A stretch of DNA of 63,246 nt, counting the filler, from Olpidium bornovanus S191 (taxonomy: Eukaryota; Fungi; Olpidiomycota): NCBI GenBank assembly GCA_017911155.1. It is 30 parts of 30 records of this genome, joined end to end, with 100 filler letters (N's around TTAATTAATTAA, not from the genome) between each part and the next. Parts side by side here need not be neighbours in the genome. Positions count along the whole stretch, not along the records: positions 58,603 to 63,246 come from JAEFCI010000844.1; 29 more parts are not named here. One strand, written 5' to 3'. The translations under genes were made by a program, and so were the position numbers. How positions within the stretch are numbered: position 1 is the first letter of the stretch; each line of letters opens with the position of its first letter. Positions 58,503 to 63,246 of this stretch are shown here, in pieces. The notes under the pieces were generated by a model. It saw nothing but the letters and a program-made list of their open reading frames with translations, searched no databases and was not told the DNA's origin.

Positions 58503-58868
58503 NNNNNNNNNNNNNNNNNNNNNNNNNNNNNNNNNNNNNNNNNNNNTTAATTAATTAANNNNNNNNNNNNNNNNNNNNNNNNNNNNNNNNNNNNNNNNNN
58601 NNCATGTGCATCCCGCATTGGTTCCAGGGCAAGAAGAGCACAACAGGATCAGCTTATGCTGTACGATTGATTACCAGATGCCATTACCGCGTTCAAGAAA
58701 GTGCTGAATCGGCGCATTTTTGGTGTAGTGGTCACCTTTTGGATCTGAAATTCCTGCATAAAACTAACGTCGACCCAACTCCACCCGGTAAGATGTGACA
58801 TAATTCGGAGACGCACAAAGTGGAAAACGAGCGTAAAACATCCCACCCGCGAATGCTTTCGTCTCCTC

Positions 58869-61488
58869 TTAGAACTGTGGGCTGAGCGTGCTCGCTGGTC
58901 CGGCGTTGGCCGTTGGCGACGGCGTCGCCGGCGGCCCCTGCCTCCGCCGACCCTCTGAACCACCGCACTTCCTTTTCGGCGTTCCGCTTTCGCCGCCGCT
59001 GCAGTTGTAGTCGCTTTGCGCGTCGCCCCCGCTGAAGCTCCCACTGTCGTCGTCTCCGGTGCTGCTGCCGTCTTCGACTTCCTCCTTTTCGCCGCCTCGG
59101 TCGCGGTTCAAAGCCGCCGCTTTCGACGGGCTGACGGCGTAGGGGCCGCGCGGGAGGAGCTCGTAACGGGAAACACAGTCGTATAGCCTGCGGGGCCAAG
59201 ATGTAGTCAGGACGAGCGCGCCGCGGAATGGAAGGTGCCCTGTTTTACGAAACGCAAAAGACTCCTCCGCTTCTCCCACCCAGACAACGCGGGGAACTTT
59301 TGGAAATGGCCGCACGTGCCGAGCCGCAAACGTTTCCTCACCACTTCTCTTGAACAACCTCTTTGGTGACTTTGCGATTTTGAACCACGCCCAGCCCGAT
59401 GCAGAAGTCGGCCAGCGAGGACGATTCGACAGGCTTGCCGCCGAGGAAGGCGACGAGCTCGTAAACCTGCACAAGATGCCGGCCAAAACCCGCGAGCACT
59501 TTAAAATCTATCGTTCACCCCAGGTAGATGGTCGCCACCTTAAAAAGCGTCCGGCGACGTGCCGGTTTACCTCTTGCCAAGGGGCCTTGGTCCGGCCGAC
59601 GAATATTTTTAACTCGGAAAGCAACCCTCGGGCGCTCCCGGCCGTCCCGTCTTCCGTCTTCAACGTTTTCGCGAAAAGTAGTCGGGACTTGCGGCAGGCG
59701 GGAAACGCTTCGTTCAGCTCAAATTCTGCTTCTCCCTGCCACGTGGCGCTTTCCAGGGATCGATACACCCTGCGGTCGTGATTGAACGTCAAGAATATTA
59801 GAATATCTGTATTGTCGGGCGCGCAAGCACACGTTGACGCGGCTTATGATGGAGTTCGCAATCATACAAAACTATATACGATGCGGTGTCATTTACTTAA
59901 TATCTTGACAGTTCGACTCCTTCGGCAACAACACCTACCATTCAGGCGAAAGTACCCAGCAGCCGCAGGCGATTGCTTTGAGGACAGACATTGTGCGCTT
60001 CGCGCTTCCGCCTAAAATGGGAATCCAGGCGCGCAAACCACACGCAAATTAAGGAAAACCGGAACAGCAAAGAACCATAGGATGAAACGGGAGGATGAAT
60101 GCAACAGCCGGACTTACTGATAAGGTGCGTTGTTGTTTTCTGAATTCTGCGCGATGCGGAAAGTGTGTGAGTCCCGTCCGGAGCGACGCCCGAAACCAGC
60201 GAACATTGCCTACCTGTTTCCGATCGCGAATCCGCCCAGTTTGCGGACGGTCGAAACGATGACATCACGCGTCCTTTCAAGGGAAAATCGGGTCCGGCCA
60301 AAACCAATTACGGCGATTGTCGTCTGCCGCGTAAAGTTTCGTCTCGGCGAACACGCGGCACGTAAGAACATAGAAATCTGACGTACGCGTCGTCTACGTT
60401 CGTCATTACGAGCGACTTCTTCTCGGGCTGTCTTTCCGCACCGCGAGGGGGAAAAGATGAGACCACGGATCTGATACTGCATAAGGCGAGTTTCAATGCG
60501 CACCTTCTTCGAAGCCGGGTCGCTTCTTCGCCTCCTGGCTGCAGTCTGGCGCTTGTTGCCGTCGACCTCCGCTAGCACAGCTGACGCGGAAACTCCGCGG
60601 CCCTGTAAACCGACCTTCCGCTTCGTCGTTTTGCCGGCTGCAAGATTTTCGACCGTCGAACTGATTTGCGGGGATAGGACCGCGACCGCCTCTGGGCTCT
60701 TCCCGAGCTCGGCCGCCGGTCGGGTTTCGGGATGTGCAGCCTCCACCGCCTCTGCAGCGTCCGGCCGCGCGGCGGGACCGGCGGGCAAAATCAAAGGAGG
60801 TGGAGCGAGCAGAGTTCGGCGCAAGGGCGGTTCGTGTGTTTCAGCCGCAGACGGCGTTTCCAGCGATCGATGCTTAGACGAGCCGGAAGTACTGTTGTTT
60901 GCTAGGGCTACATAAATAGCGATCAGTGTCCACCGCAGACACAAGGGTAATGTATCATCCGTCTTTACCTAGCAACTGTTGCGTGGAGCTAAAGCGGTCC
61001 TCGCCGGCGCTAGCGTCTGACACTTTTGTGGGTTCCATCGACTTCCGCTTCTGGATGCCAGCATAGGCAAAGTGAGCTGTTGGATAGGCGCCGGTTCGAA
61101 AGAAGAGGGTGCACGCGCTCGAAGGGCGGCGGATCGCACCCTCGCCCTCGACGTCTTCGCCGCCGTTGTCATTTCCACGAGAAACCCCGCCTCGTCAACC
61201 CTCTCGCCCCGCCTCTTGCATTCGGTCACCCACAGCACGCTGACCGGTACTGCCGCGCCGGCCGCCGAGCAGGACTCCGCGCCTGCCGCGGGATCTGTCT
61301 GCTTTCGCGCGAGCATGGCAGCATACTTGTTCCTGATCGCCGCCGTCGGGTTTTGGACGACGAGGTGTGTGCAGTCGCCGCACAGGGTCTTGCGGACCTG
61401 TGTTTGGGGAGAAAAACGCCCGGCCCGCCAGATCAGAAAACGCGCCGCCCGAGCGGGGGCAGCGCCCGACCAACGCGGGGGCGGGGCG

Positions 61489-61527
<39 letters not shown>

Positions 61528-62035
61528 ATTTCTGTCATGGCGGCTTGCGCACTTGGGACGGCGCCGCCAGGGCAAGAACCACCGCGAGACAAACGCGCGC
61601 GGGGGGGGCCCCGAGGCCTCCTCTCCCCGGCACGTTGGGGCAGAGACGATCGCGGTCTGCGTTTTCGCCCCCGCACGATAAAAAAAACCGCGCGCGAAGA
61701 ACCGGCCGGAGCCGATAAAACGCCGCACGGGGAAGGGGAAGGGGGAAGCAGGGAACACCCGAGCTCCTCTTTTTTTTTTTTTTTCTTTTTTTTTTTTTTT
61801 TTCTCCTCGCGCACCGGCGAACCTTGGCGCCCAACGCCTGCAGATCGGCGGCGAAGCCGGAGCTGGCGTCCGCGTCGTCGTCGGTGATGACGTGCACGTG
61901 GGCCACGACCCCGCCGAGGACGCCGCCCGGAAGCGGGGTCCCGGCGCGGCCGTCCTGCGCGCGCCCCGCGGAGTCGGCGGCGGGGCGCCGAGCGGGCGCC
62001 GCGGCGGCAGCGGCGGCGGGCGCGGCGCGTTTCAT
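58869..62035 (-). CDS. MCPH1: Microcephalin (MCPH1/BRIT1) homolog: N-terminal BRCT plus C-terminal tandem BRCT, apparently complete
   Basis: N-BRCT: VLGGVVAHVHV...FAADLQALGAKVRKTL...THLVV...VSVLWVTECKRRGERVDEAGF. C-BRCTs: VIVSTVRKLGGF, TTTHLIS, KRTMSVLKAIACGCWVLSPEW-VYRSLESATWQGEAEFEL...FPA, YELVAFLGGK, VVQEKWLYDCV. Confidence 0.85.
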
Positions 62036-63098
62036 GGTCGGGCGCGCGCCTGGTGGGTTTTTATTTTTTTATTTTTATTTTTTTTTTTTTTTTTCGCCCT
62101 GAACTTCCCCCGGCCGCGTTGTTGGCTGAGGGCAAAAAAAAAAACGCAAAACGGGCGCGCGGCGGGGCCCTCCCCTCTTCTCTTCCCTCTTTTTTTTTTT
62201 TTTTCCTCGACTTTTTCCCCCCGCTGGGGGCAAAGGCAAAAAAGCACCACGGCGGCGTCGGGCTTGATTCTGTCCCGTGAGCTCTGGTCACGATACACTA
62301 GTCCTTGCGTCTCGTTTTCAAGTGCTGCTCTCCACGGACGTCTCAACATCCCGCATGCGCTTTCCGCCCAGAATTGCCCTTTCCCGAACATGGACATAAG
62401 CGTGGTGTTCTGTTCCACAATGACCTGCTCACGAGGTCATTGTGAAACCTTCCCAGAAAACGTTCTTTTTTCTGTGCCGGGCGACGTCTCCTCGAAAAAG
62501 TCTTCCCATCCCTGTCACCCTCCAGATGACCGTCGTCGATTGCGCAGCGTCATCTTTTTTCCTCGGTACCTCGAGGTTCAGGCCCTCTGGCAAACAATTG
62601 CAAAGTAAACACATGATAGAAGGCAGGTTTGGCCCACGCCTCATGCTTGTGTCCTGCAGCGCTTTACACACCACTCGCCCCGTCGCCACCACCACGACAC
62701 GTCCTTCATCACCCCCGCACGCGTATGCTCGTCATCGCCTTGACAACGCGCCCTTGCTCAACCGGCCCAGACGGCTCGGCACATTAACGCGGTCGAAAAA
62801 TTTATAAGACCTCAGCGAGCCACCGAACGATTTGCAAGGCCCGCGGGTTTGTCGGCATTTGCCCCCCCCCCATCCGGCAGAATCCGTTTTGACGGGTAAT
62901 GTTTTCTCTCTCTCGGCTAAAGTTTGCGCCAGAGACGCCGTCCGCGGTGAGCTCCTTCCTCCCCCATCTTGCTGTGTACCCTCGCTGCGCGCCGAGCCCT
63001 CGTCCTCTTCCCACCGCCAACAGGCGTTTTTTTTTTTTTTTTTTTCCATTTTGCAACGCCTCTCTCTCCTCGAGGCTTGCTCGCCGGCGGCGCAAAAA

Positions 63099-63143
<45 letters not shown>

Positions 63144-63246
63144 AAAGAAAAAGAAAAAAAGAACATGTCCCGGCCGGCGCAGCTCCGCGCAGCGTTAGCG
63201 CCGCCCTCGGCCCTGTTGCCCAAGGTACCCCCCGCTGCGCCCCCCA

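What the first reader, a model, noticed from the sequence alone, without database searches (positions are those of the whole stretch)
58869..62035. Full three-BRCT microcephalin (MCPH1) in an apparent fungus
Seen: spliced exons reconstruct an N-terminal BRCT closely paralleling human MCPH1 (VVAYVEV...LVDMGAKVSKTF...THVI...VSVLWVEKC...IDESLF), a disordered linker, and a tandem C-BRCT matching [20 protein letters not shown]...WISEEPFEL and ELVHLCGG...SEKWVLDSI. Established: MCPH1 restrains condensin II and acts in DNA damage and centrosome control in animals; yeasts have no ortholog. Inference: a flagellated fungus retains the MCPH1-condensin II module. A linker segment GLIFSPSR (~60440-60465) weakly recalls the FSP-containing NCAPG2-binding motif.
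Basis: partly seen in the sequence, partly recalled or inferred. Interest (0 to 1): 0.8.

Follow-up and report, generated by a model that had tools for sequence, protein, structure and literature searches.

The report
MCPH1-type three-BRCT gene in Olpidium
This small contig of the zoosporic fungus Olpidium bornovanus carries an intact, 11-exon gene for a true relative of animal microcephalin (MCPH1), so the family is older than animals, but nothing here shows that it still controls condensin II.

Summary
The piece is the whole contig JAEFCI010000844.1 of the Olpidium bornovanus assembly. On the minus strand, 11 exons with ten GT-AG introns (62035-58869) encode a 600-aa protein: N-terminal BRCT, basic disordered linker, C-terminal tandem BRCT.

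Sequence, profile and fold searches all rank human MCPH1 first by wide margins:
- Tandem BRCT: 94 bits, against 23 for the next family.
- N-BRCT profile: 95 bits, against 49 for TopBP1.
- Foldseek: top hits are 3SZM and 2WT8.

The deposited model (507 aa, "hypothetical protein") skips most of BRCT2.

The gene is not unique to Olpidium. Same-architecture proteins occur in Mucoromycota, choanoflagellates, Capsaspora, Diphylleia, Mesostigma and a foraminiferan. This contradicts the published statement that MCPH1 is only found in metazoa.

The condensin II inference is not supported:
- The cited GLIFSPSR lies in intron 4.
- No YDDYF-SP CAP-G2 motif exists in any fungal ortholog.
- A published survey finds condensin II in only one fungal genus, Gonapodya.
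- Whether Olpidium has condensin II could not be tested here.

Most likely role: a phosphopeptide-reading chromatin or DNA-damage scaffold. Verdict: new member of a known family, moderately interesting.

The parts
61823..62035 (-). Exon 1 (aa 1-71): start codon, Ala/Pro/Arg-rich N-terminus, first half of the N-terminal BRCT, ending ...LQALGAK. Donor GTTCGC.
   Evidence: The intron after LGAK is at the same position as in Mucoromycota orthologs.
61140..61397 (-). Exon 2 (aa 72-157): second half of the N-terminal BRCT (VRKTL..CTHLVV..VSVLWVTECKRRGERVDEAGFL) plus a short spacer. Donor GTGCGA. An alternative donor at 61179 is less likely.
   Evidence: Spacing to the KRKSMEP box matches L001, Salpingoeca and Mucoromycota orthologs.
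60969..61050 (-). Exon 3 (aa 158-184): conserved basic box KRKSMEP (61050-61030) and box EDRFSSTQQ (61002-60976).
   Evidence: The RKSM[EQ]P box occurs in animal, fungal and protist orthologs. FSS[ST]QQ occurs in Bifiguratus (variant FTSSHH), Diphylleia, Mesostigma, Nonionella and P0144.
60504..60907 (-). Exon 4 (aa 185-319): disordered Ala/Pro/Arg/Lys-rich linker with basic patches (KTTKRK, RRRR). No YDDYF-like motif.
60428..60503 (-). Intron 4 (76 nt, GTGCGC...ACAG).
   Evidence: The ortholog ORF in L001 runs PDAKKVVRKTKRLIVMTNVEKQTRD with no counterpart of this stretch.
60387..60427 (-). Exon 5 (aa 320-333): PEKKSLVMTNVDD, strand beta1 of BRCT2. Read in a different frame from exons 4 and 6.
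   Evidence: (aligns to human RTLVMTSMPSE).
60214..60273 (-). Exon 6 (aa 333-353): ATRDVIVSTVRKLGGFAIGN, helix alpha1 of BRCT2.
   Evidence: The downstream intron position is shared with P0064.
60118..60146 (-). Exon 7 (aa 353-363): RIQKTTTHLI, the TTH strand of BRCT2.
   Evidence: The downstream intron position is shared with P0064 and P0086.
59939..60011 (-). Exon 8 (aa 363-387): SGSAKRTMSVLKAIACGCWVLSPEW, including the conserved R-T of the phosphopeptide site and the conserved Trp.
   Evidence: The downstream intron position is shared with P0064 and P0086 to within one residue.
59571..59769 (-). Exon 9 (aa 387-453): end of BRCT2, inter-BRCT linker helix, start of BRCT3 (VYRSLESATWQGEAEFELNEAFPACRKSR...KIFVGRTKAPWQE).
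59342..59466 (-). Exon 10 (aa 454-495): BRCT3 core (VYELVAFLGGKPV...VVQEKW).
58869..59187 (-). Exon 11 (aa 495-600 plus stop): last helix of BRCT3 (LYDCVSRYELLP), then an acidic/Gly-Ser-rich tail ending ...LSPQF.
   Evidence: The relative in L001 also ends ...GSPQF.
61179..61912 (-). N-terminal BRCT domain (aa ~42-144, interrupted by the 425-nt intron 1).
   Evidence: AF2 pLDDT above 90 in the core. Foldseek top hit 2WT8, E 7.8e-8, TM 0.82-0.86. Profile against PDB 95 bits.
59139..60421 (-). C-terminal tandem BRCT (aa ~322-511, spread over exons 5-11).
   Evidence: AF2 pLDDT 89.7, pTM 0.84. Foldseek top hit 3SZM, E 1.4e-20, TM 0.87, 34% identity. phmmer 94 bits.

Best explanation
The contig carries an intact, intron-rich gene for the Olpidium bornovanus ortholog of microcephalin (MCPH1). 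The protein is 600 aa: one N-terminal BRCT, a conserved basic KRKSMEP box and an FSSTQQ box, a ~135-aa disordered basic linker, and a C-terminal tandem BRCT.

Shown here: the gene structure, the domain architecture, and that each BRCT unit is closest to the matching unit of MCPH1. Also shown: proteins of the same build exist in Mucoromycota fungi, choanoflagellates, Capsaspora, Diphylleia, Mesostigma and a foraminiferan. The gene was therefore inherited from a pre-animal ancestor.

Inferred: it works as a phosphopeptide-reading chromatin scaffold. The tandem BRCT would dock on a phosphorylated C-terminal tail such as gamma-H2A(X), as human MCPH1 does. The N-BRCT and the linker motifs would recruit partners.

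Inferred: in Olpidium and other fungi this role does not use the vertebrate YDDYF-SP/CAP-G2 contact, and is probably independent of condensin II.
For: Gene model:
- Ten GT-AG introns give an in-frame 1803-nt CDS.
- An uninterrupted ORF of a relative (L001) aligns without gaps across junctions e5/e6 to e10/e11 (43% identity, E 3e-62). The only gap near the e4/e5 junction is 3 aa, a few residues downstream of it.
- Four intron positions are shared with Mucoromycota orthologs.

Family assignment:
- PDB phmmer: 94 bits to the MCPH1 tandem BRCT, 23 bits to the next family.
- Non-animal N-BRCT profile: 95 bits to MCPH1, 49 bits to TopBP1.
- Foldseek top hits are 3SZM/3SHT/3SHV and 2WT8/3PA6/3KTF.
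- An exhaustive HMMER search found 332 clusters at E<=1e-10. Most have two matched stretches (N-BRCT plus tandem BRCT).
- Every named animal hit is microcephalin or microcephalin-like, or an uncharacterised hemichordate protein (Saccoglossus, Glandiceps).

Fungal origin:
- Orthologs occur in Bifiguratus, Calcarisporiella, Phascolomyces, Pilobolus and Absidia. Four of these sit on 0.26-1.4 Mb contigs; the Bifiguratus contig is 35 kb.
- Two unnamed clade members sit on 0.58 and 1.9 Mb contigs.
- In an NJ tree Olpidium sits beside this fungal clade.

Phosphopeptide site: T at the end of beta1 and the R-T pair in alpha2 are conserved.

Condensin II:
- No [YHFW][DE][DE][YFHW][FY] motif is present in Olpidium or any fungal ortholog.
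- The published table gives CAPH2/CAPG2/CAPD3 = 0/0/0 in all sampled fungi except Gonapodya.
Against: - No expression or junction data for Olpidium were available. The exon 2 donor (61140 or 61179) and the exon 4 acceptor (60907 or 60901) rest on homology only.
- Function is inferred from homology alone. The residue that I recall as N696 in the human phosphate pocket is Ser here and Ser/Thr in other fungi, and I could not check the structure papers.
- Human MCPH1 also contacts CAP-D3 through its N-terminal 195 residues (cited). A condensin II link without the SLiM is therefore not excluded.
- Olpidium was not in the condensin II survey.
- The fungi shown to carry MCPH1 are not the same species as those shown to lack condensin II.
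- The contig is only 4.6 kb, from a binned metagenome of non-axenic zoospores.
- Its best fungal and best animal hits score the same: 153.7 against 153.2 bits.
Confidence: 0.75

Rival explanations
1. One reading: Olpidium keeps a working MCPH1-condensin II module, with MCPH1 restraining condensin II in interphase as in mammals.
For: - The protein is a genuine MCPH1 ortholog with an intact N-BRCT. Human MCPH1 residues 1-195 bind CAP-D3 (cited).
- Condensin II does survive in one fungal lineage, Gonapodya.
- Non-fungal lineages with an MCPH1-like protein, Capsaspora and Diphylleia, have condensin II.
- Olpidium itself was never surveyed.
Against: - The FSP segment cited as support is intronic.
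- No YDDYF-SP type CAP-G2 motif occurs anywhere in the protein or in fungal orthologs.
- Condensin II subunits are 0/0/0 in sampled lineages on both sides of Olpidium: Spizellomyces, Neocallimastix, Allomyces, Mortierella, Umbelopsis, Rhizophagus, Basidiobolus, Syncephalis, Coemansia and Ramicandelaber.
- MCPH1-like genes persist in Mucoromycota, whose sampled members lack condensin II.
Confidence: 0.15
2. The contig belongs not to Olpidium but to another eukaryote in the non-axenic zoospore preparation, and was mis-binned.
For: - The assembly is a binned metagenome: 16% of the raw assembly was kept, selected by tetranucleotide composition.
- The contig is only 4644 nt and carries a single gene.
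- The best fungal and best animal hits have equal scores.
- The closest relative (P0002/L001, 49% and 43% identity) comes from an unidentified sequencing run.
Against: - In the tree, the protein sits beside the Mucoromycota clade and apart from animals.
- It has the SMEP form of the box, as in fungi and Diphylleia, where animals have SMQP.
- Four intron positions are shared with Mucoromycota orthologs.
- The authors filtered the bin further with BLAST and mmseqs.
- Even if mis-binned, the source would still be a non-animal eukaryote.
Confidence: 0.08
3. It is a member of another BRCT family (TopBP1/Rad4, Rtt107/Brc1, an MDC1/Mdb1-like gamma-H2A reader, ECT2) that only resembles MCPH1.
For: - Pfam gives only generic BRCT families plus RTT107_BRCT_5 at 35.8 bits. 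It gives no hit to the Microcephalin family.
- All tandem BRCTs share one fold; BRCA1 scores 2e-14 in Foldseek.
Against: - MCPH1 leads every search by 45-70 bits, or about 6 orders of magnitude.
- The architecture is 1+2 BRCTs, not 6-9.
- The RKSM[EQ]P box after BRCT1 is shared with animal microcephalins.
- No named hit among the top 150 belongs to another family.
Confidence: 0.02

Closest known systems
Human/animal microcephalin (MCPH1/BRIT1); structures 2WT8, 3KTF, 3PA6 (N-BRCT) and 3SHT, 3SHV, 3SZM, 3T1N, 3U3Z (tandem BRCT)
   Same: - Same order of parts: N-BRCT, then a basic RKSM[EQ]P box, then a disordered linker, then a tandem BRCT at the C-terminus.
- 34% identity and TM 0.87 over the tandem BRCT; 28% identity and TM ~0.82 over the N-BRCT.
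- Conserved TH, Trp and R-T positions.
   Different: - 600 aa against 835 aa.
- The linker is unrelated, with no Pfam Microcephalin central region.
- There is no YDDYF-SP CAP-G2-binding motif.
- An 18-aa insertion in the N-BRCT loop is shared with its closest relative.
- It has an FSSTQQ box that animals lack.
- It has an acidic C-terminal tail.
Unnamed Mucoromycota proteins: Bifiguratus adelaidae OZJ02439.1, Calcarisporiella thermophila XP_069255365.1, Phascolomyces KAI9251905.1, Pilobolus KAI8974114.1, Absidia repens ORZ12236.1
   Same: - Same three-BRCT build and the same KRRKSMEP box.
- 30-36% identity.
- Shared intron positions in two further, unnamed members of the clade, P0064 and P0086.
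- All are annotated only as hypothetical or BRCT domain-containing.
   Different: - These are non-flagellated fungi.
- Mucorales carry their own conserved linker motifs (IKAQIKADFF[IV]GD, PLRRKRRSLG), which Olpidium lacks.
- Only Bifiguratus keeps a variant of the FSS[ST]QQ box.
Other gamma-H2A(X)-reading tandem BRCT proteins (MDC1, fission-yeast Mdb1 and Brc1, budding-yeast Rtt107, plant BCP4)
   Same: A C-terminal tandem BRCT of the phosphopeptide-binding type. The likely mode of action, docking on a phosphorylated histone tail, is the same in kind.
   Different: - Much weaker similarity: MDC1 13.9 bits, Brc1 18.6 bits, Rtt107 24 bits.
- Different N-terminal modules (FHA, or several BRCTs).
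- Arabidopsis is reported to have no protein of MCPH1 architecture.
TopBP1/Rad4 BRCT domains
   Same: Second-best family for the N-terminal BRCT (49 bits).
   Different: It scores half as high as MCPH1. TopBP1 has 8-9 BRCTs in a different arrangement.

Membership tests
MCPH1/microcephalin | A single N-terminal BRCT that is closest to the MCPH1 N-BRCT among all BRCTs | tested here: met
   - Profile of 11 non-animal N-BRCTs against PDB: MCPH1 E 2.7e-26 (95 bits), next TopBP1 6e-12.
- Foldseek: 2WT8 7.8e-8, next XRCC1 3e-5.
- Olpidium alone against PDB: E 0.003, still the best hit for that region.
MCPH1/microcephalin | A C-terminal tandem BRCT that is closest to the MCPH1 tandem BRCT | tested here: met
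   - phmmer: 3SHT/3SZM E 8e-26 (94 bits), next KKT4 3e-4.
- Foldseek: 3SZM 1.4e-20 at 34% identity, next BRCA1 2e-14 at 19% identity.
MCPH1/microcephalin | Architecture: N-BRCT, disordered linker, tandem BRCT ending near the C-terminus | tested here: met
   Spliced model. Most top library hits match in two stretches at the corresponding ends.
MCPH1/microcephalin | Best named relatives in a whole-database search are microcephalins (reciprocal-type test) | tested here: met
   The named animal clusters among the top hits are microcephalin or microcephalin-like, apart from two uncharacterised hemichordate proteins: Acropora, Diadema, Ptychodera, Crocodylus, Acipenser, Oscarella, Eptatretus, Ixodes. 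No other BRCT family appears.
MCPH1/microcephalin | Conserved basic box [KR][KR]x[KR][SC]M[EQ]P just after BRCT1 | tested here: met
   KRKSMEP at aa 158-164. The same box is found in animal, fungal and protist members.
MCPH1/microcephalin | Central-domain SLiM (YDDYF followed by a CDK S-P site) that binds CAP-G2 of condensin II | tested here: not met
   A regex scan finds it only in vertebrate-type sequences. It finds none in Olpidium, any fungal ortholog, or the invertebrate and protist members listed. The motif is defined. It is therefore a vertebrate feature rather than one shared by the whole family.
MCPH1/microcephalin | Pfam 'Microcephalin' central region | tested here: not met
   No hit at E<=1. 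Only BRCT, PTCB-BRCT, RTT107_BRCT_5 and BRCT_2 were found.
MCPH1/microcephalin | Tandem BRCT binds a phosphoserine C-terminal tail (gamma-H2AX) | not testable with these tools
   Only indirect evidence: T at the end of beta1 and the R-T pair are conserved. The Asn of the human pocket, recalled from memory, is Ser here.
MCPH1/microcephalin | Partner complex condensin II (CAP-H2, CAP-G2, CAP-D3) encoded in the same genome | not testable with these tools
The published survey lacks Olpidium and finds condensin II in Gonapodya only among fungi.
TopBP1/Rad4, Rtt107/Brc1 | Six to nine BRCT domains, with these families as the best match | tested here: not met
   Only three BRCTs are present. TopBP1 scores 49 bits, Rtt107 24 bits and Brc1 18.6 bits, against 95 bits for MCPH1.

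The most novel reading that the evidence does not exclude
MCPH1 is not an animal invention but an ancient eukaryotic protein. It is present in Olpidium, Mucoromycota, choanoflagellates, Filasterea, CRuMs, a streptophyte alga and a foraminiferan. In fungi it has outlived condensin II.

Its ancestral job would then be something other than CAP-G2-mediated condensin II inhibition. The widely conserved RKSMEP and FSS[ST]QQ boxes would mark the ancestral partner sites. The YDDYF-SP condensin II switch would be a later addition of vertebrate type.
Probability: 0.45. Interest if true: 0.6.

Novelty: new member of a known kind. Interest (0 to 1): 0.45.

Why it matters
A leading paper on MCPH1 states that it is only found in metazoa. 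My literature searches found no report of a non-animal ortholog. This locus and its relatives show the three-BRCT protein in fungi and in distant protists. Several of these belong to groups whose sampled members have lost condensin II.

This separates two roles that are entangled in mammals, DNA-damage and phospho-histone reading versus condensin II control. It also offers simple organisms in which to ask what MCPH1 did first.

There is a practical point too. The deposited Olpidium gene model drops most of BRCT2 and carries no family name, so automated ortholog surveys would miss it.

Tried and rejected
1. Word-index protein searches.
- With the Olpidium tandem BRCT alone: 221 candidates, none significant.
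- With an alignment of fungal tandem BRCTs: only 5 short unnamed fragments.
As a result I could not list further fungal taxa or look for condensin II subunits.

2. Alternative readings of the gene.
- An unspliced frame-1 reading through 60944-60210, which contains GLIFSPSR. Rejected because it removes strand beta1 (LVMT) of BRCT2 and has no counterpart in any ortholog.
- The deposited 507-aa model. Rejected because it deletes VDEAGFL, exons 5-8 with the start of exon 9, and the last helix of BRCT3.
- Donor 61179 for exon 2 (model A). Judged less likely than 61140 from the spacing seen in orthologs.

3. EDRFSS as a degenerate YDDYFSP. Rejected as a homolog of the central SLiM. It sits about 10 aa after the RKSMEP box (F177 is 13 residues past P164), the position where vertebrates have a different conserved stretch (NDRRLQRKF), and it belongs to the separate FSS[ST]QQ box.

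4. Flanks and non-coding content.
- Flanks 58603-58868 and 62036-63246: no Pfam hit for any ORF.
- No Rfam family or tRNA in the piece.

5. Sources that could not be reached.
- The structure papers for the MCPH1 phosphate pocket are not held.
- No paper mentions run SRR11108978.

6. Tool refusals.
It was rebuilt as A3.
- tblastn missed the short exons of the fungal loci. An exact-match exon mapper replaced it.
Full report
**What the piece is.** The range 58603-63246 is the complete 4644-nt contig JAEFCI010000844.1 of assembly GCA_017911155.1, Olpidium bornovanus S191. This assembly is a binned metagenome from non-axenic zoospores grown on cucumber roots. Olpidium is a zoosporic fungus, placed as the closest flagellated relative of the terrestrial fungi. 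It is deposited as a 507-aa "hypothetical protein".

**Gene model.** I read the three minus-strand frames and joined the stretches that resemble BRCT proteins at GT-AG sites with matching phase. This gave 11 exons:

| Exon | Window coordinates |
|---|---|
| 1 | 62035-61823 |
| 2 | 61397-61140 |
| 3 | 61050-60969 |
| 4 | 60907-60504 |
| 5 | 60427-60387 |
| 6 | 60273-60214 |
| 7 | 60146-60118 |
| 8 | 60011-59939 |
| 9 | 59769-59571 |
| 10 | 59466-59342 |
| 11 | 59187-58869 |

The CDS is 1803 nt and the protein 600 aa. All ten introns (61-425 nt) are GT-AG.

Three independent lines support the model.
- A 1898-nt contig from run SRR11108978 (L001) carries an uninterrupted ORF of a relative. It aligns without gaps across junctions e5/e6 to e10/e11 (43% identity, E 3e-62). 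Just downstream of e4/e5 there is a single 3-aa gap. Its upstream ORF supports donor 61140 for exon 2.
- Four Olpidium intron positions coincide with introns in Mucoromycota orthologs on 0.58 and 1.9 Mb contigs. These are the introns after LGAK, after ..IGN, after TTHLI and at SPEW.
- The human MCPH1 alignment runs through the same junctions.

The deposited model differs in several places. It jumps from ...SDPASKK straight to GEAEFELNE, which deletes most of BRCT2. It also drops VDEAGFL and the last helix of BRCT3. This probably explains why no Pfam domain is on record for it.

**Is it MCPH1?** Pfam gives only generic BRCT families. The finer tests are clear.

| Test | Best hit | Next family |
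|---|---|---|
| Full protein, phmmer against PDB | human MCPH1 tandem BRCT, E 8e-26, 94 bits | KKT4 BRCT, E 3e-4, 23 bits |
| Profile of 11 non-animal N-BRCTs against PDB | human MCPH1 N-BRCT, E 2.7e-26, 95 bits | TopBP1, 6e-12, 49 bits |
| Foldseek, tandem BRCT model (pLDDT 89.7) | 3SZM, E 1.4e-20, TM 0.87, 34% identity | BRCA1, 2e-14, 19% identity |
| Foldseek, N-BRCT model (pLDDT 79.2) | 2WT8, E 7.8e-8, TM 0.82-0.86 | XRCC1, 3e-5 |

In the full-protein search, the best hit for the N-terminal region was also the MCPH1 N-BRCT, at E 0.003. In the profile search, Rtt107 scored 24 bits and Brc1 18.6 bits.

An exhaustive HMMER search of 1.84 billion representatives found 908 clusters at E<=1e-3 and 332 at E<=1e-10. 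Most had two matched stretches, at the N-terminus and at the C-terminus. The named animal clusters are microcephalin or microcephalin-like, or uncharacterised hemichordate proteins. A basic box, KRKSMEP, directly after BRCT1 is shared with animal microcephalins, where it reads ..KSMQP or ..KCMQP.

**Whose gene is it, and how widespread is the family?** Named non-animal hits with the same architecture fall into two groups.
- Fungi: Bifiguratus adelaidae, Calcarisporiella thermophila (1.38 Mb contig), Phascolomyces articulosus, Pilobolus umbonatus and Absidia repens.
- Protists and algae: Salpingoeca rosetta, Didymoeca costata, Capsaspora owczarzaki, Diphylleia rotans, Mesostigma viride and Nonionella stella.

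In an NJ tree of the tandem BRCT, Olpidium sits beside the Mucoromycota clade. Animals form their own large cluster, and the protists branch outside it. This tree is unrooted by outgroup and has no support values, so it is only indicative. Raw scores do not separate fungi from animals: 153.7 bits for Bifiguratus against 153.2 for Acropora.

Together with the shared introns and the SMEP form of the box, animal contamination is very unlikely. Mis-binning from another non-animal eukaryote cannot be fully excluded for a 4.6-kb contig.

Houlard et al. 2021 state that "MCPH1 is only found in metazoa". Lorkovic et al. 2024 find no protein of this architecture in Arabidopsis. My three literature searches found no report of a non-animal MCPH1. 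Ortholog databases may already list such proteins, but I could not check them.

**The condensin II inference.** The motif that binds CAP-G2 is the central-domain SLiM, SSYEDYFSPDNLKER in mouse. Its YDDYF core competes with the HDDFF motif of M18BP1 and is followed by a CDK S-P site.
It reads in a frame that happens to stay open from exon 4 to exon 6 (the 244-aa ORF 60944-60210).
- A scan for [YHFW][DE][DE][YFHW][FY] finds the motif in several dozen sequences of vertebrate type. It finds none in Olpidium or any fungal ortholog. It also finds none in the coral, echinoderm, hemichordate, sponge, choanoflagellate or Diphylleia proteins.
- The SMC-complex survey of van Hooff et al. records condensin II in fungi only in Gonapodya. 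CAPH2/CAPG2/CAPD3 are 0/0/0 in Spizellomyces, Neocallimastix, Allomyces, Mortierella, Umbelopsis, Rhizophagus, Basidiobolus, Syncephalis, Coemansia and Ramicandelaber. Capsaspora and Diphylleia have the complex.
- Olpidium is not in that survey. I had no means left to search its genome.

The inference is therefore unsupported but not disproved. Human MCPH1 also touches CAP-D3 through its N-terminal part. The MCPH1-bearing fungi are also not the very species shown to lack condensin II.

**Most likely function.** What is shown is an intact three-BRCT protein of the MCPH1 family.

What is inferred is its mode of action. The tandem BRCT keeps the Thr at the end of beta1 and the R-T pair of helix alpha2, which are typical of phosphopeptide-binding tandem BRCTs. 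Established knowledge of BRCA1, MDC1 and MCPH1 then suggests that it reads a phosphorylated tail, most plausibly gamma-H2A(X). The N-BRCT and linker motifs would recruit effectors.

By my own recollection, not verified here, the position that is Asn696 in the human phosphate pocket is Ser in Olpidium and Ser/Thr in other fungi.

A second conserved box, FSS[ST]QQ, lies about 10 aa after KRKSMEP. It is shared by Olpidium, Bifiguratus (variant), Diphylleia, Mesostigma, Nonionella and a metagenomic protein, but not by animals or Mucorales. It contains an S/T-Q site of the kind targeted by ATM/ATR kinases. Its role is unknown.

**Verdict.** The identification as MCPH1 in a flagellated fungus is supported. 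The condensin II module and the FSP motif are not. This is a new, mis-annotated member of a known family. Its main value is to show, together with its relatives, that the family predates animals and persists in fungi.

Noticed in passing
window 58869-62035 (minus strand); deposited protein P0001: The GenBank model BJ554DRAFT_452 (507 aa) uses different splice sites. It loses VDEAGFL.., all of exons 5-8 with the start of exon 9 (most of BRCT2), and the last helix of BRCT3. No Pfam domain is on record for it.
   Followed up: yes
window 60210-60944 (minus strand, frame 1): A 244-aa ORF stays open through exon 4, intron 4, exon 5 (read out of frame), intron 5 and exon 6. An unspliced reading therefore looks coding. 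This is where the misleading GLIFSPSR comes from. Whether intron retention gives a real isoform is unknown.
   Followed up: partly
window 60976-61002 (EDRFSSTQQ); also P0003, P0092, P0095, P0129, P0144: A short motif, FSS[ST]QQ, about 10 aa after the RKSMEP box is conserved between Olpidium, Bifiguratus (variant), Diphylleia, Mesostigma, Nonionella and a marine metagenome protein. Animals and Mucorales lack it. It contains an S/T-Q site. Its function is unknown.
   Followed up: partly
Mucorales orthologs P0022, P0037, P0064, P0078, P0086, P0118, P0119, P0147 (linker region): The Mucorales proteins share a linker motif, IKAQIKA[DENRG]F[FYS][IV]G[DQT], and a PLRRKRRSLG box. The ADFF core loosely recalls the HDDFF/YDDYF CAP-G2 motifs, yet the sampled Mucoromycota lack condensin II. 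Olpidium has no counterpart.
   Followed up: no
L001 (Logan SRR11108978 contig, 1898 nt): This is the closest relative of the Olpidium protein (43-49% identity, same ...SPQF end). It lies on an intron-free, AT-richer contig whose N- and C-terminal halves are in two overlapping frames (17-805 and 645-1514). That pattern suggests a transcript with a frameshift or a retained piece. The source organism is unknown.
   Followed up: partly
window 61490-61526, 61770-61802, 62078-62094, 62190-62204, 63027-63045, 63100-63146: Long homopolymer runs (T37, T15+T17, T17, T15, T19, A31+A15) sit in intron 1 and in the upstream intergenic region of an otherwise GC-rich contig (exon GC 0.64).
   Followed up: no
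window 63163-63246 (plus strand): An ATG followed by MSRPAQLRAALAPPSALLPK and a GT could be the first exon of a divergently transcribed neighbour cut by the contig end. It has no family hit.
   Followed up: partly
PDB hits 6ZPK/7QRO: After MCPH1, the next-best solved structure for BRCT2 by sequence is the BRCT domain of the trypanosome kinetochore protein KKT4 (E 3e-4), ahead of BRCA1, BARD1 and MDC1.
   Followed up: no
window 61397-61140, aa 98-125: The Olpidium N-BRCT carries an ~18-aa Ala/Gly-rich insertion between helix alpha2 and strand beta4, with low pLDDT. The L001 relative has an even longer insertion at the same place. Other fungi and animals have none.
   Followed up: partly
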